From: Schizochytrium sp. TIO01 | Lineage: Eukaryota > Protista > Bigyra: Labyrinthulomycetes | Assembly: GCA_004764695.1 (NCBI GenBank) | Contig: SMSO01000031.1 | Location: forward strand, 1,650,436-1,714,435 | Direction of reading: 5' to 3' | Length of the DNA stretch: 64,000 nucleotides | Part shown: one piece after another, positions 20,191 through 64,000 of the stretch | Numbering within the stretch: the first letter of the stretch is position 1 | How the letters are laid out: every line of letters begins with the position of its first letter | Notes under the pieces: generated by a model | What the model was told of the DNA's origin: nothing | Seen by the model: only the letters and a program-made list of their open reading frames with translations | Database searches by the model: none | Made by a program: the position numbers and the translations under genes

Positions 20191-20309
20191 AACATTCAAC
20201 ACCGGGGCTTCGCATGCAGTCCCCTATCATACTACTGACCCGGCCCTACGCGACTTTACTTCTCAGTGCGAATGAGATGAGGTGTTACCCGCGTGGTATG
20301 ATCGAATGT
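20191..20309 (-). rRNA. 5S rRNA
   Basis: 119 nt ACATTCGATCATACC...AGTAGTATGATAGGGGACTGCATGCGAAG...GAATGTT with paired ends and T-run terminator; matching copy at 39624-39742. Confidence 0.95.
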
Positions 20310-21759: not shown

Positions 21760-24700
21760 TTATTCCAATCTAAAGTTTGCGCCAACAATATCTGGTGTTA
21801 GCAAAGGTGACAATAACTCTCTCAGAACGAGTCGAAGATTTCTATCCTGAATTTGTGCATTCCAGTACTCACGCAGACGTTCTGCGCGGAGCAACTGCCA
21901 CGCCTCACGAACCTGCTCAAATGAATCAGGAAAAAATGGATCTTGCCCAAGCTTTTTCAAGCAAGTTCTCACATGAGCATGACAAGCTCGTGAATTCTGA
22001 GAACTAAACTCAAGACACCAAGCGCAGAAGTGATGACCACAAGTATCAGTACCACACTTTACAGCGCAGCAACCGGCAAAATCGTGTACATATGCCTTAC
22101 AGTTTGGACAACATGTGCTCAAGATCTTCTCTTGAATATGGAGTAAATGCCGTTGTGCGTCGCGATTCTGTTCATCTGCACGCAAAACTTCTGCTATGCG
22201 CCTTTGGATCTCCTTCTCCGCCCAAACTGCTGCTTCATTTTCTGCCTTCATCTTCGCAATCAACAAAAGATGATTCAAAGCTGTTGGTGCAAGACGAGTG
22301 ATTTCTTGACCTGATATTCTTCCCCCACATTCAGGTTTCATGCATGTCATCGTTCCATCAGCATCCACTCTTACGTTAGCAAGTGGCTGTGACGCCGCTT
22401 CTACTGCAGATTTGATACAGTCTCTGCAAAGGAAGTCTCCCTCCTCGCAGCTCGTGCCCTCGGAAAGCAGATGCTCCTCCATGCATACTAGACATATCTT
22501 GACAGGGATCTTAGGAGCTCCAAAAGCTTCATGTTGGAGTGCTTGGTGAGCAGTTGGACGCTGGCCAGGGTCTGTTGCTGTAAGAGCATCGATAAGTGTC
22601 TGCATTGCAGCGGTTCGCTCAGTAGGATACAGCTCCTTTAAGCTTATGCCCACAGAGTACATGTCCATCGCTGTTTCAAACCTATCTACAGGCCCATTCT
22701 GCAACTCGGGGGCAACGTACCGTGGCGTTGCCTGGAGTGATGTGTAAGTTGCAGTGTAGTCTGCAACCTTGATGCCGTCAAAGTCGCCGATCAATGGTGT
22801 CCCGTTGCTTGTGAGAAAAATGTTTTCTGGTTTGATATCACAATGCACAATGCCATGGGTATGCAAATCCGCCACACCGATAAGCAGGCCCATAGCAAGT
22901 CGGTCGCGCACTGCTTTGCCTTCGTTAGGATGACTCTCAATCCACTTGGCAAGGTCACCTTGCTCGTAGAAAGGCATGAGGATACATCCACGCGGTTCTC
23001 CATTAGAGGTATCCACAAAAGCGCCAGTGATACGTATCACGTGCTGAGACACCACGTTTCCCATATTTGCAGCTTGCCTGTAAAATATTTTGTGTTGGCT
23101 CGAATGGCCGAGTTGAAATTGTTTCAAAACCATAGTTTTACCAACGTTGTCAAGAACCTTTTGTACTCTCTTGCCACCTCTGGAAGCAAGGGGTTCGCGG
23201 ACAGGCTTGAAGTCCGCGGCTGTGACATTCGTCAACCAAAGGTCAGAACATGCTACTTCAAAAACACCCTCTGCACTTACGTGAAGCCTTTCCAGCCAGG
23301 CTCTATCTTGCAGCAACTCTGGATAATGTTCCTGCGCGTGTTGCAGAGTCTCAGCAAGCTTATGACGAAAAGCTTTGCTAAGGTCGATAGGGTTGCCTTG
23401 AGAGAGAATGAGCTCTTGGTTTTTCATTCTATTTCTAAAATATGCTTGATCTTCCTCATCCAGGTCCTCAGCCACTAGTTCTGCTTCGGCGATTTTTAAT
23501 CTTTCTGTGGCTTTCCTTGACTTGTCGAGTTTCTGGTATAATGCTTCAACATCTGAGACAGAAGGTTCTTTCAAACCCAGTACTACATAGTCATACAGTC
23601 CAGAGAGCTCTTCTGGTGCGCACTTGCTCGCTTCATTTAACGCAGCACTTTTAGAATATCCTTCAAATCGAGCAAATGTTACACTTATTGCGCAAAGTAT
23701 TTCGGACAACTGGGCACGAAGTATATCTCCTTGTAGAGCTTCGATTTCTTCTTGAAGAGCACGCTCAAGTTCAGACAACTCCGGTTTTAGCTCCATGGCC
23801 TGCTCCGGTGTCCTCAGGGCAACCAATAATCCATCACCAAGCTTCAGCTCAGACAATCGAGAGATGACGCGCTTTACAGCTTGTTGGCTTCGTTCACCAA
23901 TGTTGTTGGATTGTCCTTCTCCACTCCTCTTATACTCTTCGACGCATTTGACAGCCTGAACAACGAGTTCTTGGCAGTGTTTAAAGTCATCTGTGCTGGT
24001 CTCTTCCGTGACTGGCGCAGGTTTGATATTTAGATGATCTACCAAACTTTCGACTTTCACTTTGAAATCTCGCCCTATATCTTCATCACTTTCGCAAAGT
24101 TTTGCGCGAACCCATGGGTACACAACCTGCAAAAGCGAATGCAGGCGACTTCGTTCGGCGTTCCGCTTTTCGATGAGGCTGGACAAGCCATCAACAGAGC
24201 TTGCACGAATCTTGCCTTGTAGTGCGTCAAGACCCTCTTTGGAGTTCTTGATGTCAGCGGAAAGCTGTCGCAACTTCACTTGGCCAAAGTAGCCCTGGAT
24301 CGCCGGTCCTACGAATTCCTCAAGCAAGGCAATCCCAGTCTGCAGGGAGTTTTCTCTGACCCCGCCTGGGTCCGCGCGCAAGTCCGAGACTTTTTTGGCA
24401 AGCTGCACCACATCAGCGAAACTCACGCTCCCTCCATCCGGCCGTTCTCTGAGGTGGACAAAAAGACGTAAACAAACGAGCAAAGTGAAGACATTTGAAG
24501 CAGCAACAGAGGCAGAAGCAAAAGTTAGGATCTCCAAAATATCTCAACAACACAATTTGTGGAATGAATGATCACACGATCCCTAACAAAAAACGCATGA
24601 ACTTACCCAGATATGTTCTCTCCAGGAGAACGCACCCTTTCGAACAATTCTTTAAAAGACAAATATACATCATAGAGACTGCGTCTTGTAAACGAATAAA

Positions 24701-27700
24701 AAAACGAACGAAAGAGAATAACAGTACTTGATAGAATAACGATGACCGCATCTAAAGATAGCTTCGCAAGTCTATGGAGACACAGAGAGAACCAGCAGAG
24801 GCAAAAGCAAAAGTTAGGATCTCCAAAATATCTCAACAACACAATTTGTGGAATGAATGATCACACGATCCCAAATAAAAAAACGCATGAACTTACCCAT
24901 ATATGCCATCTTGCTCACTCTTCGAGGCACAGAAATCGGTCTCTGATGAGGAGTAAATATCCTCTCCAGGAGAACACACCCTTTCGAACAATTCTTTAGG
25001 GGTTCCACGAAAGCTGTCATAGCTGCGTTTTGTAACGAATGTGAATACACGAATGAAAGAGAACAAGAGCGTTTGTTAGAAGCACGATTAACGCATCTAA
25101 AGACCGCCTCGCAAGTCCATAGAGACATGGAGAGAACCATAGATGTAAAGGCTCTGCGAAAGCTAGGCCCAGCAGCAGAGGGAACGGAACTTACTAGATT
25201 TGAACAGAAGGACATGCTTTGTGCAGGGACTTCGCGACAGCCTTTGCGCCCTCATCGCCAATGTTGTTGTCGTCAAGACTGTGAGTATAAATGAATAAGT
25301 TTGTTTTGTTCATTCGTTGTCAGGAAAGACACGTCCGGTCAGTTGATCCTGTTTTGTTTTATTTTTCCTCACAATAAAAAGCAATCACCTCTTCTTCTTC
25401 TTCTTCTGCTGCTGCTGCTGCCTATCAAATTATATTGATTTCCTTCTTCTCTTTGTAAAAAAGAAAAGACTTCTTTGCCTTTCTTTGCGTACCCAACTAC
25501 GTAAACTACTTAGGTAGTGTACCAGCAGTACTACAAACACCGACCACTAAAAAGAAAGAAAAAAAAAAACTTGGTCCTGACTATTACGATAGCTTTCCCT
25601 CGTGGATGATTCCACAAACGTACGACAAAGTTTGAAGGTTCTTGCATCCCTCGAGTGCCTTTGCGACGGCCTTTGCGCCCTCCGAGCCAATGTCGTTCCC
25701 AGAAAGACTGTGAGTATAAATGAATAAGTTTGTTTTGTTCATTCGTTGTCAGAAAACACAGGTCCAGTCAGTTGATCCTGTTTTGTTTTGTTTTTCCTCA
25801 CAATAAAAAGCAATCAGCTCTTCTTCTTCTTCTTCTTCTGCTGCTGCTGCTGCTGCTGCCTATCAAATTATATAGATTTCCTTCTTCTCTTTGTAAAAAA
25901 GAAAAGACTTCTTTGCCTTTCTTTGCGTACCCAACTACGTAAACTACTTAGGTAGTGTACCAGCAGTACTACAAACACCAAGCACTCAAAAGAAAGAAAG
26001 AAAAAGCTTGGTCCTGACTATTACGATAGCTTTCCCTCGTGGATGATTCCACAAACGTACTACAATTGTTGAAGGCTCTTGCATCCCTCGAGTGCCTTTG
26101 CGACGACCTTTGCGCCCTCCGAGCCAATGTTGTTGTGCCAAAGACTGTGAGTATAAATGAATAAGTTTGTTTTGTTCATTCGTTGTCAGGAAAGACAGGT
26201 CCAGTCAGTTGATCCTGTTTTGTTTTGTTTTTCCTCATAATAAAAAGCAATCACCTCTTCTTCTTCTTCTTCTGCTGCTGCTGCCTATCAAATTATATAG
26301 ATTTCCTTCTTCTCTTTGTAAAAAAGAAAAGACTTCTTTGCCTTTCTTTGCGTACCCAACTACGTAAACTACTTAGGTAGTGTACCAGCAGTACTACAAA
26401 CACCAAGCACTAAAAAGAAAGAAAGAAAAAGCTTGGTCCTGACTATTACGATAGTTTTCCATCGTGGATGATTCCACAAACGTACTTCAGATAAGTCAGG
26501 TTCTTGCATCCCTCGAGTGCCTTTGCGACGGCCTTTGCGCCCTCCGAGCCAATGTTGTTGTGCCAAAGACTGTGAGTATAAATGAATAAGTTTGTTTTGT
26601 TCATTCGTTGTCAGGAAAGACAGGTCCAGTCAGTTGATCCTGTTTTGTTTTGTTTTCCCTCACAATAAAAAGCAATCAGCTCTTCTTCTTCTTCTTCTTC
26701 TGCTGCTGCTGCCTATCAAATTATATAGATTTCCTTCTTCTCTTTGTAAAAAAGAAAAGACTTCTTTGCCTTTCTTTGCGTACCCAACTACGTAAACTAC
26801 TTAGGTAGTGTACCAGCAGTACTACAAACACCAAGCACTCAAAAGAAAGAAAGAAAAAGCTTGGTCCTGACTATTACGATAGCTTTCCCTCGTGGATGAT
26901 TCCACAAACGTACGACAAAGTTTGAAGGTTCTTGCATCCCTCGAGTGCCTTTGCGACGGCCTTTGCGCCCTCCGAGCCAATGTTGTTTTGAGAAAGACTG
27001 TGAGTATAAATGAATAAGTTTGTTTTGTTCATTCGTTGTCAGGAAAGACAGGTCCAGTCAGTTGATCCTGTTTTGTTTTGTTTTTCCTCACAATAAAAAG
27101 CAATCACCTCTTCTTCTTCTTCTTCTGCTGCTGCTGCCTATCAAATTATATTGATTTCCTTCTTCTCTTTGTAAAAAAGAAAAGACTTCTTTGCCTTTCT
27201 TTGCGTACCCAACTACGTAAACTACTTAGGTAGTGTACCAGCAGTACTACAAACACCAAGCACTCAAAAGAAAGAAAGAAAAAGCTTGGTCCTGACTATT
27301 ACGATAGCTTTCCCTCGTGGATGATTCCACAAACGTACTACAATTGTTGAAGGCTCTTGCATCCCTCGAGTGCCTTTGCGACGACCTTTGCGCCCTCCGA
27401 GCCAATGTTGTTTTCAGAAAGACTGTGAGTATAAATGAATAAGTTTGTTTTGTTCATTCGTTGTCAGGAAAGACAGGTCCAGTCAGTTGATCCTGTTTTG
27501 TTTTGTTTTTCCTCACAATAAAAAGCAATCAGCTCTTCTTCTTCTTCTTCTTCTGCTGCTGCTGCTGCTGACTATCAAATTATATTGATTTCCTTCTTCT
27601 CTTTGTAAAAAAGAAAAGACTTCTTTGCCTTTCTTTGCGTACCCAACTACGTAAACTACTTAGGTAGTGTACCAGCAGTACTACAAACACCAAGCACTCA

Positions 27701-30700
27701 AAAGAAAGAAAGAAAAAGCTTGGTCCTGACTATTACGATAGCTTTCCCTCGTGGATGCTTCCACAAACGTACGTTAAAGTTTGAAGGTTCTTGCATCCCT
27801 CGAGTGCCTTTGCGACGGCCTTTGCGCCCTCCGAGCCAATGTTGTTGTTGTAAAGACTGTGAGTATAAATGAATAAGTTTGTTTTGTTCATTCGTTGTCA
27901 GGAAAGACAGGTCCAGTCAGTTGGTCTTGTTTTGTTTTGTTTTTCCTCATAATAAAAAGCAATCAGCTCTTCTTCTTCTTCTGCTGCTGCTGCTGCTGCT
28001 GCCTATCAAATTATATAGATTTCCTTCTTCTCTTTGTAAAAAAGAAAAGACTTCTTTGCCTTTCTTTGCGTACCCAACTACGTAAACTACTTAGGTAGTG
28101 TACCAGCAGTACTACAAACACGAAGCACTAAAAAGAAAGAAAGAAAAAGCTTGGTCCTGACTATTACGATAGCTTTCCCTCGTGGATGATTCCACAAACG
28201 TACTCTAAAGTTTTAAGGTTCTTGCATCCCTCGAGTGCCTTTGCGACGGCCTTTGCGCCCTCTGAGCCAATGTTGTTGTTACGAAGACTGTGAGTATAAA
28301 TGAATAAGTTTGTTTTGTTCATTCGTTGTCAGGAAAGACAGGTCCAGTCAGTTGGTCTTGTTTTGTTTTGTTTTTCCTCATAATAAAAAGCAATCAGCTC
28401 TTCTTCTTCTTCTGCTGCTGCTGCTGCTGACTATCAAATTATATAGATTTCCTTCTTCTCTTTGTAAAAAAGAAAAGACTTCTTTGCCTTTCTTTGCGTA
28501 CCCAACTACGTAAACTACTTAGGTAGTGTACCAGCAGTACTACAAACACCAAGCACTCAAAAGAAAGAAAGAAAAAGCTTGGTCCTGACTATTACGATAG
28601 CTTTCCCTCGTGGATGCTTCCACAAACGTACGTTAAAGTTTGAAGGTTCTTGCATCCCTCGAGTGCCTTTGCGACGGCCTTTGCGCCCTCCGAGCCAATG
28701 TTGTTGTTGTAAAGACTGTGAGTATAAATGAATAAGTTTGTTTTGTTCATTCGTTGTCAGGAAAGACAGGTCCAGTCAGTTGGTCTTGTTTTGTTTTGTT
28801 TTTCCTCATAATAAAAAGCAATCAGCTCTTCTTCTTCTTCTGCTGCTGCTGCTGCTGCCTATCAAATTATATAGATTTCCTTCTTCTCTTTGTAAAAAAG
28901 AAAAGACTTCTTTGCCTTTCTTTGCGTACCCAACTACGTAAACTACTTAGGTAGTGTACCAGCAGTACTACAAACACCAAGCACTAAAAAGAAAGAAAGA
29001 AAAAGCTTGGTCCTGACTATTACGATAGCTTTCCCTCGTGGATGATTCCACAAACGTACGACAAAGTTTGAAGGTTCTTGCATCCCTCGAGTGCCTTTGC
29101 GACGGCCTTTGCGCCCTCTGAGCCAATGTTGTTGTTACGAAGACTGTGAGTATAAATGAATAAGTTTGTTTTGTTCATTCGTTGTCAGGAAAGACAGGTC
29201 CAGTCAGTTGATCCTGTTTTGTTTTGTTTTTCCTCACAATAAAAAGCAGTCACCTCTTCTTCTTCTGCTGCTGCTGCGTATCAAATTATATAGATTTCCT
29301 TTTGCCTTCCTTCTTCTCTTTGTAAAAAAGAAAAGACTTCTTTGCCTTTCTTTGCGTACCCAACTACGTAAACTACTTAGGTAGTGTACCAGCAGTACTA
29401 CAAACACCAAGCACTAAAAAGAAAGAAAGAAAAAGCTTGGTCCTGACTATTACGATAGCTTTCCCTCGTGGATGATTCCACAAACGTACGACAAAGTTTG
29501 AAGGTTCTTGCATCCCTCGAGTGCCTTTGCGACGGCCTTTGCGCCCTCTGAGCCAATGTTGTTTTGATCAAGACTGTGAGTATAAATGAATAAGTTTGTT
29601 TTGTGTTCATTCGTTGTCAGGAAAGACAGGTCCAGTCAGTTGATCCTGTTTTGTTTTCTTTTTCCTCACAATAAAAAGCAATCACCTCTTCTTTTGCTGC
29701 TGCGTATCAAATTATATAGATTTCCTTCTTCTCTTTGTAAAAAAGAAAAGACTTCTTTGCCTTTCTTTGCGTACCCAACTACGTAAACTACTTAGGTAGT
29801 GTACCAGCAGTACTACAAACACCAAGCACTCAAAAGAAAGAAAGAAAAAGCTTGGTCCTGACTATTACGATAGCTTTCCCTCGTGGATGATTCCACAAAC
29901 GTACTCTAAAGTTTTAAGGTTCTTGCATCCCTCGAGTGCCTTTGCGACGGCCTTTGCGCCCTCCGAGCCAATGTTGTTGTTGTAAAGACTGTGAGTATAA
30001 ATGAATAAGTTTGTTTTGTTCATTCGTTGTCAGGAAAGACAGGTCCAGTCAGTTGGTCTTGTTTTGTTTTGTTTTTCCTCACAATAAAAAACAATCAGCT
30101 CTTCTTCTTCTTCTTCTTCTGCTGCTGCTGCTGCTGCTGACTATCAAATTATATAGATTTCCTTCTTCTCTTTGTAAAAAAGAAAAGACTTCTTTGCCTT
30201 TCTTTGCGTACCCAACTACGTAAACTACTTAGGTAGTGTACCAGCAGTACTACAAACACCAAGCACTAAAAAGAAAGAAAGAAAAAGCTTGGTCCTGACT
30301 ATTACGATAGCTTTCCCTCGTGGATGATTCCACAAACGTACCCAAGTTGAGTCAGGTTCTTGCATCCCTCGAGTGCCTTTGCGACGGCCTTTGCGCCCTC
30401 CGAGCCAATGTTGTTGTTGTAAAGACTGTGAGTATAAATGAATAAGTTTGTTTTGTTCATTCGTTGTCAGGAAAGACACGTCCGGTCAGTTGATCCTGTT
30501 TTGTTTTGTTTTTCCTCATAATAAAAAGCAATCAGCTCTTCTTCTTCTTCTGCTGCTGCGTATCAAATTATATAGATTTCCTTCTTCTCTTTGTAAAAAA
30601 GAAAAGACTTCTTTGCCTTTCTTTGCGTACCCAACTACGTAAACTACTTAGGTAGTGTACCAGCAGTACTACAAACACCAAGCACTCAAAAGAAAGAAAG

Positions 30701-32764
30701 AAAAAGCTTGGTCCTGACTATTACGATAGCTTTCCCTCGTGGATGATTCCACAAACGTACTCTAAAGTTTGAAGGTTCTTGCATCCCTCGAGTGCCTTTG
30801 CGACGGCCTTTGCGCCCTCCGAGCCAATGTTGTTGTTGTAAAGACTGTGAGTATAAATGAATAAGTTTGTTTTGTTGATTCGTTGTCAGGAAAGACAGGT
30901 CCAGTCAGTTGGTCTTGTTTTGTTTTGTTTTTCCTCATAATAAAAAGCAATCAGCTCTTCTTCTTCTTCTGCTGCTGCTGCTGCTGACTATCAAATTATA
31001 TAGATTTCCTTCTTCTCTTTGTAAAAAAGAAAAGACTTCTTTGCCTTTCTTTGCGTACCCAACTACGTAAACTACTTAGGTAGTGTACCAGCAGTACTAC
31101 AAACACCAAGCACTAAAAAGAAAGAAAGAAAAAGCTTGGTCCTGACTATTACGATAGCTTTCCCTCGTGGATGATTCCACAAACGTACTTCAGAAAAGTA
31201 AGGTTCTTGCATCCCTCGAGTGCCTTTGCGACGGCCTTTGCGCCCTCTGAGCCAATGTTGTTGTTACGAAGACTGTGAGTATAAATGAATAAGTTTGTTT
31301 TGTTCATTTGTTGTCAGGAAAGACAGGTCCAGTCAGTTGATCCTGTTTTGTTTTGTTTTTCCTCACAATAAAAAGCAGTCACCTCTTCTTCTTCTGCTGC
31401 TGCTGCGTATCAAATTATATAGATTTCCTTCTTCTCTTTGTAAAAAAGAAAAGACTTCTTTGCCTTTCTTTGCGTACCCAACTACGTAAACTACTTAGGT
31501 AGTGTACCAGCAGTACTACAAACACCAAGCACTAAAAAGAAAGAAAGAAAAAGCTTGGTCCTGACTATTACGATAGCTTTCCCTCGTGGATGATTCCACA
31601 AACGTACCCAAGACGAGTCAGGTTCTTGCATCCCTCGAGTGCCTTTGCGACGGCCTTTGCGCCCTCATCGCCAATGCTATTATAAGAAAGACTGTGAGTA
31701 TAAATGAATAAGTTTGTTTTGTTGATTCGTTGTCAGGAAAGACAGGTCCAGTCAGTTGGTCTTGTTTTGTTTTGTTTTTCCTCATAATAAAAAGCAATCA
31801 GCTCTTCTTCTTCTTCTGCTGCTGCTGCGTATCAAATTATATAGATTTCCTTCTTCTCTTTGTAAAAAAGAAAAGACTTCTTTGCCTTTCTTTGCGTACC
31901 CAACTACGTAAACTACTTAGGTAGTGTACCAGCAGTACTACAAACACCAAGCACTAAAAAGAAAGAAAGAAAAAGCTTGGTCCTGACTATTACGATAGCT
32001 TTCCCTCGTGGATGCTTCCACAAACGTACGACAATTGTTGAAGGTTCTTGCATCCCTCGAGTGCCTTTGCGACGGCCTTTGCGCCCTCTGAGCCAATGTT
32101 GTTTTGAGAAAGACTGTGAGTATAAATGAATAAGTTTGTTTTGTTCATTCGTTGTCAGGAAAGACAGGTCCAGTCAGTTGATCCTGTTTTGTTTTGTTTT
32201 TCCTCACAATAAAAAGCAATCACCTCTTCTTCTTCTGCTGCTGCTGCTGCGTATCAAATTATATAGATTTCCTTCTTCTCTTTGTAAAAAAGAAAAGACT
32301 TCTTTGCCTTTCTTTGCGTACCCAACTACGTAAACTACTTAGGTAGTGTACCAGCAGTACTACAAACACCAAGCACTAAAAAGAAAGAAAGAAAAAGCTT
32401 GGTCCTGACTATTACGATAGCTTTCCCTCGTGGATGATTCCACAAACGTACTCTAAAGTTTGAAGGTTCTTGCATCCCTCGAGTGCCTTTGCGACGGCCT
32501 TTGCGCCCTCACGACCAATTCTTTTCCCACCAAGACTGTGTTTGTTTGTTTGTTTGTGAACAAGTGAGAGTAAGTATATGCCATTTCCAACTTCTTCATT
32601 AGTGCCACTACTAGTTCAATTCTATTCTTCTTCTACAAAGCTGACTACTACAACACATCGACGACACGATGCCTCCTCTTCTGTCTCCTCCCTTCTGCAT
32701 CGTGCACCTACCAAATCTCCGTCGTATCTTCTGTGATGTCCTCAATTCTCTCTGCTTTGGTCAT
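21760..32764 (-). CDS. 22-exon LRR - helical/coiled region - Ser/Thr kinase - RING1/RING2(RBR-like) protein, about 1483 aa
   Basis: Hand-spliced, all introns GT-AG and phase 2, no stops. Exons: 32712-32764 (MTKAERIEDITEDTTEI); LRR exons 32452-32535, 32030-32113, 31608-31691, 31189-31272, 30761-30844, 30342-30425, 29905-29988, 29490-29573, 29060-29143, 28632-28715, 28204-28287, 27773-27856, 27339-27422, 26914-26997, 26486-26569, 26061-26144, 25624-25707, 25195-25278; linker exons 24897-25022 and 24607-24678; terminal exon 21760-24448, in frame with the 925-aa ORF (VLK, HCDIKPEN, DFD, APE kinase motifs; Cys-rich fingers). Total 4452 nt. Confidence 0.88.
25195..32540 (-). repeat. ~430-bp tandem array (84-nt LRR exon plus ~340-nt intron), 18 exons and 17 introns
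   Basis: Unit spacing 415-437 bp; donor GTACGT and acceptor CACAG on minus strand; exon consensus LxxNNIGSEGAKAVAKALEGCKNLxxLx; intron holds a variable (CTT)n(CTG)m tract. Confidence 0.96.
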
Positions 32765-32874
32765 CGTGTTTTGCAGCAGTGAGTGTCACCTTTGATGGAT
32801 GGATTGATGGATTGATCAATCGCGTTGATATTGACTTTGCTTTGTCTTTGTCTTCGCTTTGCTTTGGCGCTCGA

Positions 32875-32899
32875 AAGAGAGAGAGAGAGAGAAAGAGAG
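32875..32899. repeat. (GA)n microsatellite upstream of the LRR-kinase start codon
   Basis: GAGAGAGA run about 110 bp 5' of the ATG at 32764. Confidence 0.75.
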
Positions 32900-58455: not shown

Positions 58456-61400
58456 TATTATACATTATATTTATTTAATGATTTTACAATAAAAAGTTAG
58501 TTTAATGAAGAATTTAAAATATTTTCTTTTAAAAAATTAAAAAGATTTTATGCGCCTGCTGACATTCGCGGATATGGGAGACTTCAATAAGAACAGTATA
58601 TAATATGATGGAAGTCCTTTGTCTAATTTGTAGAACTATTTTTTCACCACAATTCAATGTTGATCGTCGATGAATTGTGAAGCGTTCTAGTGGTGCTTGT
58701 AGAAAAGTTCTACCTATTTCATTCATAGTGTCAAGAGATAATCTATATATGGGACCGGGGTATACTAGGTATTGACGAGTGGTCATTAGTCACGCCTTTT
58801 TATAGCCCCTTAACAATATCTTTCCCCGTTGTTGAGAAAATGAGTCTTATACTAAACAATTTATTCTCTGTCCTGCTAACAAATAGAGTGATAACCTCCA
58901 GCTTCATTTCTCAAGCTTGCGAGAAGCTTTTCTCTCATGAATCAAATGTGGTCATCTCAACAAGTAATGGGCTATCGAGTGGTTCTTCTAGAAAATTTCT
59001 GGTTTTTCTTTTCATAGAGTTAGAACACTACTAAACTCAGCTCTTTCTCCTTATTAATAATATGAGAAACTAAGAAATGACTTTGAAAGTAAAAAAAACA
59101 TAATATTAATTTATTTTTTTCTAAAGCACCACGTCTATCTTGTTGCAAATTGCACCAGGGTCCCAACGGTACCCCTACATGATTTATATCTTTCCCTGTT
59201 GATAAGAAAATGTAGTTTATACTGGTCATTTAATTCTTTATCCTGCTCACAAATAGAGTGACAACTTGGAGCTTGTTTTCTCAAGCTTGCAAGAAGAGTT
59301 TTTCTCGTAAATCAAATACACGCATCTTAACAATCCATGAGCTATCGAATGGTGCTTGTAGTAAAGCTCTGTCAATTCTATTGATAAAGTTAGAACACTA
59401 CCAAACCCAGTTCCTTTCCCCTATTAATAATATGAGAGACCAAAAATAAACTTTCAAAGGTCAGTAAAACTATATGTTTAAAGTATTGTTTCGGAGAAAA
59501 CACATCTACCCTGCTGTAAATTCAAGCCGCTTTCCAATGGTACCACTGGATGATTAATATATTATCTCATAGTTGAGATACTGAATCTTATACTATTCAA
59601 TTTACCCTTTATCATGCTAATAAATAGAGTAATAACTTAGAGCTTCTTTTCTCAAACTTGAAAAAAGATTTTCTCTCATGAATCAAATGAGGCCACCTCA
59701 ACAATCCATGCCTTATCCAGTGGTTTTTCTTGGAAAGTTTTGCTTACTCTACTCATAGAGTTAAAACACTACTAACTCGGTTCCTTCCCCATATTAATAA
59801 TATGAGAGACCAAAAATAAACTTTCAAAGGTCAGTAAAACTATATGTTTAAAGTATTGTTTCTGAGAAATTACATCTACCCTGTTGTAATTTCAAGCAGC
59901 TTTCCAATGGTACCACTCCATGATTTATATGTTCCCCTGTTGTTGAGAAAATGAATCTTGTACAAATCTTTTAATTATTTCTTTTGTTATCAAATAGAGT
60001 AACAACTTAGAGCTTCTTTTCTCAAACTTAAAAGAAGATTTTCTCTCATAAATCAAATGCACTCATCTTAACACTTCATAAACTATCGATTGATGTTTGT
60101 AGAAAAGCTCTGTCGATTGTATTTATAGAGATACAACACTACTAACCCAGTTCCTTCCCCCTATTAATAATATGAGAGACAAAAAAAATAACTTTTAAAG
60201 GTCAGTCAAATGCATGTTTAAAGTATTTTTTCTGAGAAAACACATTCAATCTGTTGTAAATTCAACCAGCTTTCCAATGGTACACTTCAATAATTAATAT
60301 ATTATCCCGTTGTTAAGAAAATGAATCTTATACTAACCATTTAATTCTCTGTCCTGCTCACAAACAGAATGATAACTTGGAGCTTCTTTTCTCAAGCTTG
60401 ACAGGGTCTGTTTTCTCACAAATCAAATTCGGGCATCTCAACAATTCGTGTTCTATCAAGGGATGTCTATAGCAAAGTCCTTTCTATTCTATTCATAGAG
60501 TTAGAGCACTACTAAACTCAGTTCTTTCTCCCTATTATTGATATGGGCGATTAAGAAATAACTTTCAAAGGTCAGTAAAAATAAATTTTAAAAACATTTC
60601 GCCTGAGAAAACACATCTACCCTGTTGTAAATTGCCCCAGCTTTCCAACGGTACCACCTGATGAGTAATATCTTTCCCCGTTGTTGAGAAAATGAACCTT
60701 ATTCTAATCATTTTGCTGCTCACAAATAGAGTGGCAACTTAGAGCTTCTTATCTCAGGCTTGAAAGAAGAGTTTCTCTCATAAATCAAATGCACCCACTT
60801 TAACTATTATTCAGCTATGCGACGATGCTTGTAGCAAAGTTCTATCTATTATATGCATAAAGTTACAACACTACTAAACTTGTTCCCTCCCCCTATTAAT
60901 AATATGAGAGACCAAGAAATAACATTCAAAGGTCAATAAAAATTAATTTTAAACATATTTCGCCTGAGAAAACACATCTCGCCTATTGTAAATCTTAACA
61001 GCTTTCCAACGGTACCACCTGTTGATTAGTATCTTTAGTGGTTAATGAAATATTGTCCCTTGTGAGGATCCATCAACTGCTTGTTTAAATAAAGTGATAA
61101 CTAGGAGCTTTTTTTCGCAAGCTTGAAAGCATATTTTCTCGCAACGATTATAACTATACTGTGGTAACAACGACGCACTTCCCGACGGTGCTTGTCGAAA
61201 AGACCTAACAATTTTATCAAGAAAGTTATAACAGTACTAAGTTTAGTTCTTTTCTCTTATTAATAATATAGAAGAGTAACATTTTCTTTTAAAAGTTCGA
61301 AAAATACTTTCAAAGATTTGTTTTTTCTGACTCATGCCATCATCCGTATTCTGTATTGCTTGCGCTTTCTACTGATCCAAATCTTTAAATGATCAATAAT

Positions 61401-64000
61401 GTAGTTGTGGAGATAATGGGGTTTTGAAGAAGTGAGAGGCTGCTGCCAAATACCTGGAAGGGTATTTTCTCATAATTTTAGAACGATTTCCTCTGGAGAA
61501 CTTCAATAGTATAGCTCTCCATAAATTTTCTGGTCTAATGGTGCAAGAATAACATGTGTCTTTCGAGTAGTTGTCGAGAAAATATGTCTTTCTTTCTTTC
61601 GATAATCCATCAGTTGCCTGATAAAGTGATCACTTGGAGCTTCTTTCCGCAAGCTTGAAAACATAATTTTTCGCAACGATTATAACTATACTGTGGTAAA
61701 ACCGACGCAGGTCCCGTCAGTGCTTGTCAAAAATATCTAGCTACTTTATCCAGAAAGTTACAACAGTACTAAGTTTAGTTTTTTTCTCTTATTAATAATA
61801 TAGAAGAGTAACATTTTCTTTTAAAAGTTCGAAAAATACTTTCAAAGATTTGTTTTTTCTTGTTCATGTCATCGTCCGTATTCGTTATTGCTTGCGCTTT
61901 CTACTGATCCAATTCTTTAAATGATCAATAAAGTAGTTGTGGAGATAATGGGGTTTTGAAGAAGTGGGAGGCTACTGCCAAATACCTGGAAGGGTATTTT
62001 CTCATAAATTTCGAATGCTTTCCTCTGGAGAATTTCAATAGTACAGCTCTCCATAAAATCGCTGATCTAATGGTACAAAAATAACATGTGTCTTTCAAGT
62101 ATTTGTCGAGAAAATATGTCTTTCTTTCTTTCGATAATCCATCAGTTGCCTGCTAAAGTGATCACTTGAAGCTTCTTTCCGCAAGCTTGAAAACATATTT
62201 TTTCGCAACGATCATAACTACCCTGTGGTAAAACCGACGCAGGTCCCGTCAGTGCTTGTCAAAAAGATCTAGCTATTTTATCCAGAAAGTTACAACAGTA
62301 CTAAGTTTAGTTCTTTTCTCTTATTAATATTATGGAAGAGTAACATTTTCTTTTCAAAGTTCGAAGAATACTTTCAAAGATTTGTTTTTTCTCACTCATG
62401 CCATCATCCGTATTTTATATTGTTTGCGCTTTCTACTGATCCAAATCTTTAAATGATCAATAAAGTAGTTGTGGAGATAATGGGGTTTTGAAGAAATGGG
62501 AGGCTGCTGCCAAATTCCTGGAAGGGTATTTTCTCATAATTTTAGAATGGATTCCTCTTGAGAACTTTCACAGTACAGCTCTCCATAAATTTGCTGATCG
62601 AATGGTGCAAGAATAACATGTGTCTCTCAAGTAGTTGTCGAGAAAAGCTGTCTTTCTTTATTTATTCTGAGTTAAATTAAAAATAATTTCAAAAGATGGC
62701 AACTACGTAGGGGTCAAACTCGATGTTGCCAAGAGTATTTTTCAATTCAGGCACACCTATTCTATGCAAAATTAAATTTCCGATCTAATGATATCATTTT
62801 TATGGATCTCACTCTTCTTGGTGTTGATAAAATACCCCTTTGTTCAAAGTAATAGTATATTGAGAAAGACAGAGCGAGTTGAAAGAAGCGTTATAAGGAT
62901 GATGTAGGGGTCTTCTGAGCCATTAATAAAATATTTTTTAACTTTTGTGCTGTCACCATGTTCATTCTTGCCGAATCCTAGCTCGTAGTTCAAAAACGAA
63001 AAACATCAATCAACTCCTCATCGAGAAAAGACCCCCTCAATATCAATAGCATTATTCTTACTTTCTTTTAAAAATTAAAAACCTTCAGTTCGATTTAAAA
63101 GAAAATTAAAAGATGGCAACTACGTAGGGGTCAAACTCGATATTGCCGACCGTATTTTTCAATTCTGACACGCCTATCCTATGCAAAATTGAATTTTCTA
63201 TCCAATGATGCCACTGTTATGGACCTCTCTTTGCTTGGGGTTGATTAAATACCCCTTTGTTCAAAGTAATAGCATATTGAGAAAGACAGAGCGAGTTGAA
63301 AAAAGCGTTATAAGGATGATGTAGGGGTCTTCTGAGCCATTAATAAAATGTTTTTTAACTTTTGTGCTGTCACAATGTTCATACTTTCCGAACCCTAGCT
63401 CGTAGTCCGAAAACGAAAAACATCGATCAACTCCTTATCGAGAAAAGATCCCCTCAACAGTATCTTTTTCTTACTTTCTGTTTCAAATTAAAAACCTTTA
63501 AATAGATTTAAAAGAAAATTAAAAGATGGCAACTACGTAGGGGTCGAATTCGATGTTGCTGACAGTATTTTGCAATTCTGGCACACCTATCCTATGCCAA
63601 ATTGAATTTCCTGTCCAATGGTACCCCTTTTAAGGATCTCACGTTTCTTGGTGTTGATAAAATACCCCTTTGTTTAAAGTAATAGTATATTGAGAAAGAC
63701 AGAGCGAGTTAAAAGAAACGCATTAACTATGATGTAGGGGTCTTCTGAGCTATCGATCAAAATATTTTTTACCTTTTGGGCTGTCATCATGTTAATACTT
63801 TCCGAATCCTAACTCGTAGTCCAAAAATGAAAATCATCGATCAACTCCTTGTCGAGAAAATACCCCCTCAATAGCATCATTTTTACTTTCTTTTTTAAAT
63901 TAGAAACCTTTTTAACAATTCTTTAAATTTAAAAGAAAGCATAAAAATATTTTAAATAACCTAACGACGGTTCTCTGTTTAAAACGTACTATTATTTCCT
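58456..64000 (-). repeat. Inverted copy of subtelomere 52029-57573 (classes C, B, A)
   Basis: Position x maps to 116029-x; mirrored ORF translations are identical (e.g. 57243..57500+ and 58529..58786-). Confidence 0.95.

What the first reader, a model, noticed from the sequence alone, without database searches (positions are those of the whole stretch)
25195..32535. Hidden one-exon-one-LRR array with variation focused on the predicted binding face: candidate variable immune-type receptor
Seen: what looks like satellite DNA is 18 in-frame 84-nt exons on the minus strand. Framework codons (NNIGSEGAKAVAKALEGCKNL) and ~340-nt introns are almost invariant. The x positions of LxxLxLxxN differ by multi-nucleotide non-synonymous changes: 10 exon-start types (GG, SQ, SY, RN, YN, DQ, SE, WH, SG, DD) and 10 exon-end types (QTLD, QQLS, TRLG, TFLN, TQLG, KTLD, QTLS, QTLT, QQLY, TYLN). 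Established: these x residues form the concave ligand-binding sheet of RNI-type LRRs. One-repeat-per-exon diversification has been reported for Ectocarpus LRR-ROCO and NB-ARC-TPR genes. Inference: codons more variable than the neighbouring introns imply diversifying selection on a recognition surface, possibly against viruses or parasites. I do not know of such a system described in labyrinthulomycetes.
Basis: partly seen in the sequence, partly recalled or inferred. Interest (0 to 1): 0.95.

Follow-up and report, generated by a model that had tools for sequence, protein, structure and literature searches.

The report
Hypervariable LRR-kinase gene hidden in satellite
A 428-base "satellite" between two 5S rRNA genes near a chromosome end of an Aurantiochytrium-like protist is really the exon-intron array of a spliced gene for an 18-repeat leucine-rich-repeat protein fused to a kinase, and only the predicted binding-face residues vary, as expected of a fast-diversifying recognition receptor family.

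Summary
On the minus strand, 25195-32535 holds 18 exons of 84 nt in phase 1, each flanked by CAG|..|GTACG. Each encodes one 28-residue RI/NLR-type LRR.

Nucleotide diversity is 0.49 in the 18 binding-face nucleotides, 0.035 in the scaffold and 0.02 in the introns.

The array belongs to one gene (32764..21760): a short N-terminus, 18 LRRs, two linker exons, a helical region, a protein kinase and a Cys-rich RING-like tail. RNA-like contigs lack the introns and carry GT-AG joints. A public transcriptome peptide (P0097) is a spliced paralogue.

The unit occurs at 268 or more places on 17 or more contigs. At least 45 loci keep the open terminal exon.

Introns differ by about 3% both within and between arrays. 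The sequence just 3' of the arrays differs by about 15%. So the arrays are homogenised genome-wide while the x positions of xxLxLxx stay diverse.

Selection for diversity is the likeliest cause, but it is not proven. pN/pS is only about 1.5, and synonymous sites inside the patches are also hypervariable.

An immune role is inference only.

By position and unit length the array fits the published "non-coding" LORE-TEARS Group 5. This scan has already found the same system many times on other DNA of this genome.

The parts
32712..32764 (-). Exon 1: ATG at 32762-32764, 17 codons (MTKAERIEDITEDTTEI) plus 2 nt, donor GTAGGT.
   Evidence: The N-terminus is 12/17 identical to that of the transcriptome-derived paralogue P0097 (MTKVTRIIDIKEDTTEV). 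No reads were laid here, so this exon is inferred.
25195..32535 (-). 18 LRR exons of 84 nt, one 28-residue RI-type LRR each, phase 1, separated by 17 near-identical introns of 331-353 nt. Exons: 32452-32535, 32030-32113, 31608-31691, 31189-31272, 30761-30844, 30342-30425, 29905-29988, 29490-29573, 29060-29143, 28632-28715, 28204-28287, 27773-27856, 27339-27422, 26914-26997, 26486-26569, 26061-26144, 25624-25707, 25195-25278. The first (LGGKRIGREG..) and last (..AKSLHKACPSVQI) repeats are conserved cap types.
   Evidence: Joints 25278/25624 and about 29143/29490 appear in RNA-like contigs.
24897..25022 (-). Linker exon A (YYDSFRGTPKELFERVCSPGEDIYSSSETDFCASKSEQDGIY).
   Evidence: Contig X4 record 13 joins 25195 to 25022. 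Joint 24897/24771 (GT..AG) is seen in X1 and X4. Translation.
24607..24771 (-). Linker exon B, a tandem duplicate of the exon A region. Its 5' part is exonised intron-like sequence encoding a hydrophobic stretch (LAKLSLDAVIVILSSTVILFRSFFYSF). Kyte-Doolittle 19-residue mean reaches 2.0.
   Evidence: Joints 24771/24897 and 24607/24448 in X1 and X4. Hydropathy. The segment is present in only a few paralogues.
21760..24448 (-). Terminal exon, 895 codons plus stop. It encodes a helical region of about 420 residues with no Pfam match, then a protein kinase domain (about 22627-23163), then a Cys-rich tail (21763-22560) with a RING-like finger (about 21928-22113).
   Evidence: ORF. Pfam Pkinase E 1.9e-28 at residues 429-607. 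The tail matches the RNF4 RING weakly, E 5e-4. The tail is 68% identical to P0097.
20191..20309 (-). 5S rRNA gene flanking the 3' end of the gene.
   Evidence: Rfam RF00001, 96.5 bits.
39624..39742 (-). Second 5S rRNA gene. The array therefore lies between two consecutive 5S genes, about 25 kb from a telomere repeat at 57598-57961.

Best explanation
The 428-bp tandem repeat is the ligand-binding domain of a transcribed, spliced gene (32764..21760, minus strand). The gene is built of exon 1, 18 one-LRR exons, two linker exons, and a 2.7-kb exon encoding a helical region, a protein kinase and a RING-like zinc-finger tail. It is one of roughly 50 paralogues that sit mostly beside the 5S/rDNA units near chromosome ends.

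The repeat units are kept near-identical within and between chromosomes, introns included. I infer that frequent short-tract ectopic gene conversion and unequal crossing-over cause this. The same process changes unit number and reshuffles the two small variable patches of each exon.

The five solvent-facing x residues of the xxLxLxx beta-strand escape homogenisation. Each strand is encoded half by the end of one exon and half by the start of the next. The most likely reason is that selection favours repeats that differ on the concave face.

The product lacks a signal peptide and carries NLR/RI-type repeats. It is most likely an intracellular recognition protein whose LRR horseshoe binds variable ligands and signals through the kinase and RING module.

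Shown: gene structure, splicing, family size, homogenisation, and the position and chemistry of the variable residues. Inferred: gene conversion as the mechanism, selection as the cause of diversity, and any immune or other recognition role.
For: Exon array and diversity contrast.

Splicing:
- In runs X5 and X8 the intron-only bins have depth 0 while exon bins are covered.
- GT..AG joints are seen at 24448/24607 and 24771/24897 (X1, X4) and at 25278/25624 (X8). Contig X4 record 13 joins 25195 to 25022.
- P0097, a peptide labelled MMETSP0961 (a transcriptome project), has the same N-terminus, four in-frame LRRs, the same linker motif and a tail 68% identical to ours.
- P0097 maps to G000 C31:8498633-8500585 with one LRR per exon.

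LRR class: LRR_6 hits per exon. PDB sequence matches to DRC5, designed RI-like LRRs, NOD2 and RanGAP1. In the P0097 model the LRR part has pLDDT 80-93, with strands covering repeat residues 26-28, 1 and 2 and helices covering residues 7-18. Structure matches: NOD2 Z 16.2, RanGAP1 Z 16.2, NLRP1 Z 13.1.

Family: 268 or more unit matches on 17 or more contigs at 92-98% identity. At least 45 loci keep an open terminal exon of about 925 aa.

Homogenisation: intron p-distance is 0.028 within arrays and 0.030 between arrays. The 300 nt just 3' of the last LRR exon differ by 0.148 on average between the same loci. The closest paralogue (flank 0.7% different) has 6 units of largely different types against 18 here.

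Diversity: among 148 intact exons there are 58 start types, 41 end types and 138 distinct exons. Entropy peaks at residues 2, 3, 25, 26 and 28. pN/pS is 1.5-1.6 in these codons against 0.28-0.45 in the scaffold. Variable residues are 77% polar or charged, 11% aromatic, 2.6% aliphatic and 0.1% Pro, which indicates a filtered protein surface rather than decay.

Shuffling: association between sites falls from z 12-23 for adjacent codons to 4.3 at 12 nt, 3.2 at 47 nt, 2.4 at 62 nt and 0.3 across the intron.
Against: - The runs laid are only guessed to be RNA and are contigs, not reads. The linker is 100% identical in a copy on C34, so the joints cannot be assigned to this locus rather than a near-identical paralogue.
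- Only two canonical joints inside the array were listed. Most other joints come from paralogues.
- pN/pS is modest. Synonymous sites within the patches are as variable as replacement sites, so positive selection is not formally shown.
- No ligand, expression response or phenotype is known.
- The hydrophobic stretch in linker exon B could be a membrane anchor, which would change the topology. It is recent and present in few paralogues.
- The kinase has DFD in place of DFG and no obvious alpha-C glutamate, read by eye.
- Some paralogous arrays carry frame-breaking changes, so either the assembly is imperfect in these repeats or some family members are decaying.
Confidence: 0.62

Rival explanations
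1. The diversity is made by a mutational mechanism aimed at the patches, not by selection. This could be local hypermutation or templated micro-conversion from a pool of cassettes, possibly even somatic. Selection would only remove stops and unsuitable residues.
For: Synonymous positions inside the patches are hypervariable. Third position of Leu24 has pi 0.34. First and third positions of Leu27 have pi 0.41 and 0.57. Patches behave as tight haplotype blocks. In paralogous arrays the rare frame-breaking indels and stops lie at the variable sites. The closest paralogue has an almost wholly different array.
Against: No mechanism or cis-signal was identified. Elevated linked synonymous diversity is also expected for old haplotypes held by balancing selection. 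The indels include chimeras of the two scaffold variants (GGTCGATGAG, GGCGATCGGAG). These look like consensus or polishing errors where repeat copies differ. The strong residue filter and pN/pS above 1 show that selection acts in any case.
Confidence: 0.13
2. The gene is real, but its role is not defence. The variable LRR may be a substrate- or partner-selecting module of a kinase/E3 family (as in F-box-LRR adaptors), or it may serve self/non-self or mating-type recognition.
For: The architecture ends in a kinase and a RING-like finger. There is no NACHT, TIR or death-fold domain in this gene. RI-type LRRs occur in many non-immune proteins such as DRC5, RanGAP1 and tropomodulin.
Against: Hypervariability confined to the concave face, a large subtelomeric family and rapid array turnover are the classical signature of recognition of fast-changing ligands (plant R genes, VLRs, Ectocarpus ROCOs; PMC3341825). 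Housekeeping adaptors are conserved.
Confidence: 0.2
3. The repeat is structural chromosome-end DNA, the published view of LORE-TEARS, and the open frames are incidental or relics. Alternatively, the array is an assembly artefact.
For: Its position between 5S genes and its unit length of about 421-428 bp fit LORE-TEARS Group 5, described as lacking similarity to known sequences and proposed to serve chromosome-end maintenance. The contig contains a telomere-to-telomere join. One paralogous array, L007, looks badly polished.
Against: All 18 of 18 exons are in frame with canonical splice sites despite 49% diversity at the patches. The residue filter points to a protein surface. Intron-free RNA-like contigs and a transcriptome peptide exist. 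At least 45 terminal exons are open. Every unit of this array is individually distinct in SNPs and microsatellite length, which argues against collapse or artificial expansion. A structural role for the DNA is not excluded and could coexist with coding.
Confidence: 0.05

Closest known systems
Ectocarpus LRR-ROCO (and NB-ARC-TPR) candidate immune receptors with one repeat per exon (Zambounis et al. 2012, PMC3341825; brown-algal ROCOs 2024, PMC11378527)
   Same: One LRR per exon, also in a stramenopile. Exon duplication and shuffling occur. Positively selected sites lie on the concave face. The genes form clustered, fast-turning-over families.
   Different: The exons are 84 nt encoding an RI/NLR-type 28-residue repeat, not 72 nt encoding a 24-residue repeat. 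The output is a kinase plus a RING-like tail, not ROC-COR. Introns are homogenised genome-wide to about 97%. The arrays sit in the subtelomeric 5S/rDNA setting. Each beta-strand is split by the intron.
LORE-TEARS, probably Group 5, of Aurantiochytrium limacinum (Collier et al., bioRxiv 10.1101/2023.06.15.545109)
   Same: A tandem unit of about 421-428 bp between two consecutive 5S genes near TTAGG telomeres. The 417- and 370-bp arrays distal to the 28S gene match Groups 1 and 2.
   Different: They were published as anonymous spacers with a proposed role in chromosome-end maintenance. 'LRR' and 'leucine' do not occur in that text. Here they are the exons and introns of a protein-coding gene. 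Sequence identity with the published elements could not be tested.
Plant LRR resistance genes (NLRs, RLPs, RLKs) with hypervariable xxLxLxx residues
   Same: Variation is focused on the solvent-exposed x of xxLxLxx. The genes form families reshaped by unequal crossing-over and gene conversion (established knowledge; cited in PMC3341825).
   Different: The LRR class is different (RI-type, 28 residues). There is no NB-ARC domain and no signal peptide. The scaffold and introns are far more uniform than in plant clusters.
Vertebrate NLR and ribonuclease-inhibitor LRR domains
   Same: Same fold class: NOD2 Z 16.2, NLRP1 Z 13.1, RI Z 10.8. From memory, they also use symmetric phase-1 LRR exons that allow in-frame exon gain and loss.
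   Different: Vertebrate exons encode two repeats (57 residues), and the repeats within a gene are not homogenised. There is no NACHT domain here.
Lamprey and hagfish variable lymphocyte receptors
   Same: Conserved first and last LRR caps flank variable internal LRR modules. Diversity lies on the concave sheet.
   Different: VLRs are assembled somatically from flanking cassettes by cytidine-deaminase-linked gene conversion. Here complete arrays are encoded in the germline, and somatic change was neither seen nor testable.
Subtelomeric contingency gene families (Plasmodium var, trypanosome VSG, yeast FLO/PAU)
   Same: Location near chromosome ends, ectopic recombination among ends, and rapid turnover of variable surfaces.
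   Different: Those encode surface antigens or adhesins of parasites or yeasts. This family encodes an apparently intracellular LRR-kinase and is interleaved with rRNA genes.

Membership tests
RI/NLR-type leucine-rich repeat (Pfam LRR_6, 28-29-residue class) | Repeat of 28-29 residues with LxxLxLxxN(x)IGxxGAxxLAxAL: a beta-strand followed by an alpha-helix. | tested here: met
   Period is exactly 28 residues. Four of five single exons hit PF13516 at E 6.5e-4 to 8e-3, each below the whole-protein cut-off because one repeat is 27 aa. PDB sequence matches to RI-like LRR proteins, E 5e-7 to 1e-3. The strand and helix pattern is seen in the model of paralogue P0097.
RI/NLR-type leucine-rich repeat (Pfam LRR_6, 28-29-residue class) | Curved solenoid fold matching solved RI-class LRR domains. 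| tested here: met
   P0097 model residues 4-147 match NOD2 LRR at Z 16.2, rmsd 2.5 over 140 residues. RanGAP1 Z 16.2. NLRP1 LRR Z 13.1. This was tested on a paralogue, because the joined product of this gene was not built.
LORE-TEARS Group 5 (Collier et al. preprint) | Tandem unit of about 421 bp lying between two consecutive 5S rRNA genes in the subtelomere. | tested here: met
   Unit is 415-437 bp, TRF period 428. 5S genes at 20191-20309 and 39624-39742. Telomere repeat at 57598-57961. 5S genes lie beside eight paralogous arrays.
LORE-TEARS Group 5 (Collier et al. preprint) | Sequence identity to the published Group 5 consensus. | not testable with these tools
   The published sequences are not held in any searchable collection here. 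The species of G000 was not established. P0097 is only 93-94% identical to its best G000 locus.
Ectocarpus-type exon-shuffled ROCO receptors | ROC-COR GTPase module downstream of the LRR exons. | tested here: not met
   Pfam finds only Pkinase and PK_Tyr_Ser-Thr in the 895-residue terminal exon.
Plant-type LRR receptor kinase | Signal peptide, extracellular 24-residue plant-specific LRRs, a single transmembrane helix and a cytoplasmic kinase. | tested here: not met
   The N-terminus MTKAERIEDITEDTTEI is acidic with no hydrophobic core. The repeats are RI-type, 28 residues. A hydrophobic stretch exists in linker exon B, but it is recent and absent from most paralogues.
RING / RBR-type E3 ligase tail | Cross-brace Cys/His zinc finger(s), and for RBR the RING1-IBR-RING2 order with a catalytic Cys. 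| tested here: inconclusive
   No Pfam hit at E up to 0.1. Weak phmmer match of tail residues 150-211 to the RNF4 RING, E 5e-4, and to a parkin fragment, E 0.5. The tail model of P0097 had pLDDT below 50.
VLR-like somatically assembled receptors | An incomplete germline gene completed by somatic insertion of LRR cassettes. | not testable with these tools
   The germline array is complete and open. No single-cell or clonal data are available.

The most novel reading that the evidence does not exclude
The chromosome ends of this protist would carry a diversity-generating system. Subtelomeric recombination, perhaps with patch-targeted mutation or templated micro-conversion and possibly varying between clonal cells, would continuously remake the binding faces of about 50 LRR-kinase-RING sensors. 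That would make it a protist counterpart of anticipatory immune repertoires, hidden in repeats published as rDNA spacers.
Probability: 0.12. Interest if true: 0.95.

Novelty: new variant of a known kind. Interest (0 to 1): 0.78.

Why it matters
- It re-reads a published class of "non-coding" chromosome-end repeats as protein-coding exons.
- It gives labyrinthulomycetes, hosts of persistent mirusviruses, a first candidate large variable receptor family.
- It is an unusually clean natural case of genome-wide concerted evolution and maintained diversity seen side by side within 84-nt exons.
- It extends the one-LRR-per-exon design known from brown algae to a second stramenopile lineage, with a different LRR class and a kinase plus RING-like output.
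- It makes testable whether subtelomeric recombination serves as a receptor-diversifying engine in free-living protists.

Tried and rejected
- **Second genome fetch.** The family statistics therefore rest on 19 arrays.
- **Annotated full-length relatives.** The search for homologous proteins with the terminal exon returned only three ORF-called relatives (51-59% identity) without LRRs. No annotated full-length protein was found.
- **Origin of P0097.** Its header taxid 87120 resolves to a fungus. A. limacinum is 87102, and 'MMETSP0961' is in no searchable paper. The organism of that transcriptome is therefore not established here.
- **Exon skipping.** Joints between non-adjacent units carry foreign patch letters between the two sides. 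I read them as transcripts of paralogues, not as evidence of alternative splicing.
- **'Head-to-head pair of LRR genes'.** The large plus-strand ORF next door is a copia-type retrotransposon. The diverged LRR exons lie beyond the next 5S gene.
- **Functional RNA in the introns.** No Rfam family is present in 25195-32535.
- **Bacterial promoter scan** is irrelevant for a eukaryote.
- **Transmembrane receptor topology.** Considered but not adopted, because there is no signal peptide and the hydrophobic exon is recent and subfamily-specific.
- **Joined spliced product.** It was never built, searched or folded. Exons were handled one by one by reference, and a natural transcript-derived paralogue was folded instead.

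Full report
**1. Observation**

Tandem Repeats Finder reports a single array at 25230-32519, period 428, 17.1 copies, 93% matches. Reading the minus strand and scanning for CAG + 84 nt + GT(A/G) with an open frame gives exactly 18 units. All share the same phase: the first nucleotide of each exon completes the last codon of the previous one.

Each unit encodes L-x-x-N-N-I-G-S/D-E-G-A-K-A-V-A-K-A-L-E-G-C-K-N-L-x-x-L-(x).

An alignment of the units shows introns of 331-353 nt. They differ by a few substitutions and by the length of a (CAG)n(AAG)n microsatellite. Nucleotide diversity over units 1-17:

| Region | Diversity |
|---|---|
| nt 5-10 and 73-84 of the exon | 0.487 |
| the other 66 exon nt | 0.035 |
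| 329 ungapped intron columns | 0.020 |

**2. The whole gene**

- Upstream, an ATG at 32762-32764 opens a 53-nt exon (MTKAERIEDITEDTTEI) with a GTAGGT donor.
- Downstream of the last LRR exon lie two linker exons, 25022..24897 and 24771..24607.
- A 2,689-nt terminal exon follows, 24448..21760.
- Pfam places a protein kinase domain at residues 429-607 of the terminal exon, E 1.9e-28.
- The last 266 residues are Cys-rich and match the RNF4 RING only weakly, E 5e-4.
- Linker exon B is a tandem duplicate of the exon A region. Its 5' part corresponds to intron sequence of exon A and encodes a hydrophobic stretch, with a Kyte-Doolittle 19-residue mean up to 2.0. Only a few paralogues have it. I do not take it as proof of a membrane topology.

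**3. Transcription and splicing**

No run is on record as RNA. I laid four contig sets whose sizes (21-39 million letters against a 64-Mb genome) and word shares (0.19-0.42) suggested transcriptomes.

- In X5 and X8 the intron-only bins (26700-26899, 27100-27299, 27500-27699, 27900-28099, 28700-29099) have depth 0, while neighbouring exon bins are covered.
- Joints with CT..AC ends, which are GT..AG on the minus strand, occur at 24448/24607 and 24771/24897 (X1, X4) and at 25278/25624 (X8).
- A near-canonical joint lies at 29143/29491 (X8).
- Contig X4 record 13 joins 25195 to 25022.
- Joints between non-adjacent units carry 9-27 foreign letters that decode as other variable patches. I read these as spliced transcripts of paralogues.

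Caveats: these are contigs, RNA is a guess, and the linker is 100% identical in a copy on contig C34. The joints therefore prove splicing of this gene type, not of this locus alone.

Independent support came from a phmmer search of 1.84 billion proteins. The query was one exon read by reference, 27 codons plus 13 intron codons. Among generic RI-LRR proteins it returned P0097, a 399-residue peptide whose source label is an MMETSP transcriptome.

- P0097 starts MTKVTRIIDIKEDTTEV.
- It has four in-frame LRRs and the same last-repeat motif (AKSLHKSCPFVRI).
- It has the same linker motif (PRELFARVCSRGEDI).
- Its tail is 68% identical to ours, E 2e-121.
- Its best locus in this genome (C31:8498633-8500585, 93-94% identity) is split at 28-residue intervals, one LRR per exon.

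**4. What the repeats are**

Single exons hit Pfam LRR_6. In the PDB they match DRC5, designed RI-like LRRs, NOD2, RanGAP1 and ribonuclease inhibitor.

I folded the natural paralogue P0097 instead.

- Its LRR part is confident, pLDDT 80-93.
- Strands lie at residues 16-20, 44-48, 72-76, 100-104 and 128-132, with helices in between.
- In repeat numbering the strand covers residues 26-27-28-1-2 and the helix covers residues 7-18.
- The hypervariable residues 26, 28 and 2 therefore alternate with the core leucines 27 and 1 inside the strand. Residues 25 and 3 flank the strand. Together these five are the x positions of the classical xxLxLxx motif.
- The model aligns to the NOD2 LRR (Z 16.2, rmsd 2.5 over 140 residues), RanGAP1 (Z 16.2) and the NLRP1 LRR (Z 13.1).

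Concave-face exposure itself follows from established LRR structure. It was not computed here.

**5. Family and setting**

- One unit (exon plus intron) matches at least 268 places on at least 17 contigs at 92-98% identity. Many lie within 75 kb of contig ends.
- The tail of P0097 finds at least 45 loci with an uninterrupted terminal exon of about 925 aa.
- Rfam shows that the window holds two rDNA units and two 5S genes, at 20191-20309 and 39624-39742, which bracket our gene. Eight fetched paralogous loci also have a 5S gene beside the array.
- TRF shows 417-bp and 370-bp arrays distal to the second 28S gene, then (TAGGT)72 abutting (AACCT)63 and the mirror image of those arrays. This is a chromosome end joined telomere-to-telomere to another within the contig.
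- The layout is that of the LORE-TEARS described for Aurantiochytrium limacinum: Group 1 about 406 bp, Group 2 about 366 bp, Group 5 about 421 bp "between two consecutive 5S", and a TTAGG telomere.
- That preprint calls the repeats spacers without database similarity and never mentions LRRs. No other paper in the library uses the term. I found no thraustochytrid LRR-kinase literature.

**6. Evolutionary pattern**

I fetched 20 paralogous loci. After setting aside one suspect array (L007), 148 intact internal exons from 19 arrays remained.

- They give 58 start types, 41 end types and 138 distinct exons.
- Entropy is 3.4 and 3.2 bits at residues 2 and 3, and 1.4, 2.4 and 2.8 bits at residues 25, 26 and 28.
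- Entropy is at most 0.6 bits elsewhere, except for residue 5 and the S/D dimorphism at residue 8.
- Intron p-distance is 0.028 within arrays and 0.030 between arrays on different contigs.
- The 300 nt immediately 3' of the last LRR exon differ by 0.148 on average between the same loci. For the window against most of the other loci the difference is 0.17-0.24.
- The arrays are thus homogenised as a genome-wide pool, independently of their flanks.
- The closest paralogue (flank 0.7% different) has 6 units against 18 here and shares only a few unit types. Array content therefore turns over faster than flanking sequence.

Statistical association between variable sites decays with distance:

| Pair of sites | z |
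|---|---|
| adjacent codons | 12-23 |
| 12 nt apart | 4.3 |
| 47 nt apart | 3.2 |
| start patch to end patch of one exon (62 nt) | 2.4 |
| two halves of one strand, across the intron | 0.3 |

This is what frequent short-tract conversion among units would produce. It means each beta-strand is a free combination of two patches.

**7. Selection or mutation?**

- Nei-Gojobori proportions in the five variable codons are pN 0.53-0.56 and pS 0.33-0.37, a ratio of 1.5-1.6. In the scaffold the ratio is 0.28-0.45.
- The ratio exceeds 1 but not by much, because synonymous positions inside the end patch are themselves hypervariable. These are the third base of Leu24 and the first and third bases of Leu27.
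- That fits old patch haplotypes kept by diversity-favouring selection while everything around them is converted. It would equally fit patch-targeted mutation.
- The variable residues are strongly filtered: 77% polar or charged, 11% aromatic, 8% Gly, 2.6% aliphatic and 0.1% Pro. These are typical of binding surfaces and unlike neutral decay.
- I therefore favour selection for diversity acting against homogenisation. I rate it likely, not shown.

**8. Caveats on the assembly**

In array L007, 13 of 19 units carry 1-nt indels or stops at the variable sites. Some are chimeras of the two scaffold variants. A handful of such units occur in other arrays. This looks like consensus or polishing error where repeat copies differ, but real decay or targeted mutation cannot be excluded.

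The window's own array has none of these defects, and every unit is individually distinct. Some contig ends appear twice in the assembly, with identical scores for C24:4394-6214 and C32:2893928-2895748. Family counts are therefore approximate.

**9. Comparison and novelty**

- The design, one LRR per exon with shuffling and variation on the concave face, is known from Ectocarpus ROCO genes (PMC3341825; PMC11378527).
- Focused xxLxLxx variation is classical for plant R genes.
- At the protein level, other public RI-LRR arrays show the same near-identical scaffold with variable strand positions: P0012, a ROC-type protein, and P0037, a kinase-LRR.
- New here are the RI-type 84-nt exon with the intron splitting the strand, the genome-wide homogenised introns, the kinase plus RING-like output, the interleaving with subtelomeric rRNA genes, and the fact that the repeat class was published as non-coding.
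- I file it as a new variant of a known kind.

This scan has already reported the same system many times on other DNA of this genome: 84 notes hold 'LRR exon hypervariable'. One follow-up concerns a 425-base repeat on a kinase-ligase gene, which is evidently this family. My figures were obtained independently on this window.

**10. Steps not done**

- The joined spliced protein was not built, searched or folded, by operator rule.

Noticed in passing
window 57598-57961 and 58113-58430; arrays 52118-53338, 54994-57214, 58825-61032, 62691-63911: (TAGGT)72 abuts inverted (AACCT)63, with the 370-bp and 417-bp arrays mirrored on either side. Two chromosome ends are joined telomere-to-telomere 1.7 Mb inside a 9.8-Mb contig. 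This is either an assembly or scaffolding join or a real fusion.
   Followed up: no
window 33809-38845 (+) and 33478-33503: An intact 1,678-aa intronless ORF has RVT_2, integrase core, Pol beta-barrel and SH3-like domains. It is a Ty1/copia-type retrotransposon lying between the 5' end of the LRR gene and the next 5S gene. A short interstitial telomere-like (TTAGG)5 lies just before it.
   Followed up: partly
window 41304-42707 (+): Six diverged 84-nt phase-1 RI-type LRR exons with short, unrelated introns lie between the 5S and 18S genes, where the published scheme places the 385-bp Group 0 repeat. They are an old, non-homogenised version of the same exon design.
   Followed up: partly
L007 (G000:C7:1068000-1077999); also single units in L008, L009, L014, L019, L020: 13 of 19 units in L007 carry 1-nt indels or stop codons at the variable sites. 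Some are chimeras of the S-E and D-E scaffold variants. This could be polishing error in repeats, a decaying array, or patch-targeted mutation.
   Followed up: partly
L006:5814, L011:5761, L016:7438, L018:7622 and 8510 (array-strand coordinates): A recurrent longer exon variant has a G-rich insertion in the start patch (LGGGGWGCNKIG / LGGGFFGGNNIG). It is about 96 nt. In some copies it is out of frame by one G in a homopolymer.
   Followed up: no
window 32761-33159 (-): A 132-aa low-complexity ORF ends in a TGA that overlaps the ATG of the LRR gene (ATGA). It may be an upstream ORF in the 5' leader.
   Followed up: no
proteins P0012 and P0037: Unrelated public proteins, a ROC-type GTPase with 20 RI-LRRs and a kinase with 7, show the same near-identical repeats with entropy confined to the strand positions after LxxL. 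The homogenised scaffold with a variable face therefore recurs widely, even without introns.
   Followed up: partly
G000:C24:4394-6214 and G000:C32:2893928-2895748: Two contig ends give identical scores unit for unit, which suggests the same chromosome end is present twice in the assembly.
   Followed up: no
window 2267-7792 and 45596-51137: Two complete 18S-5.8S-28S units lie in the same orientation 43 kb apart, with tRNA genes at 193-544, 8953-9023 and 9775-9848.
   Followed up: no
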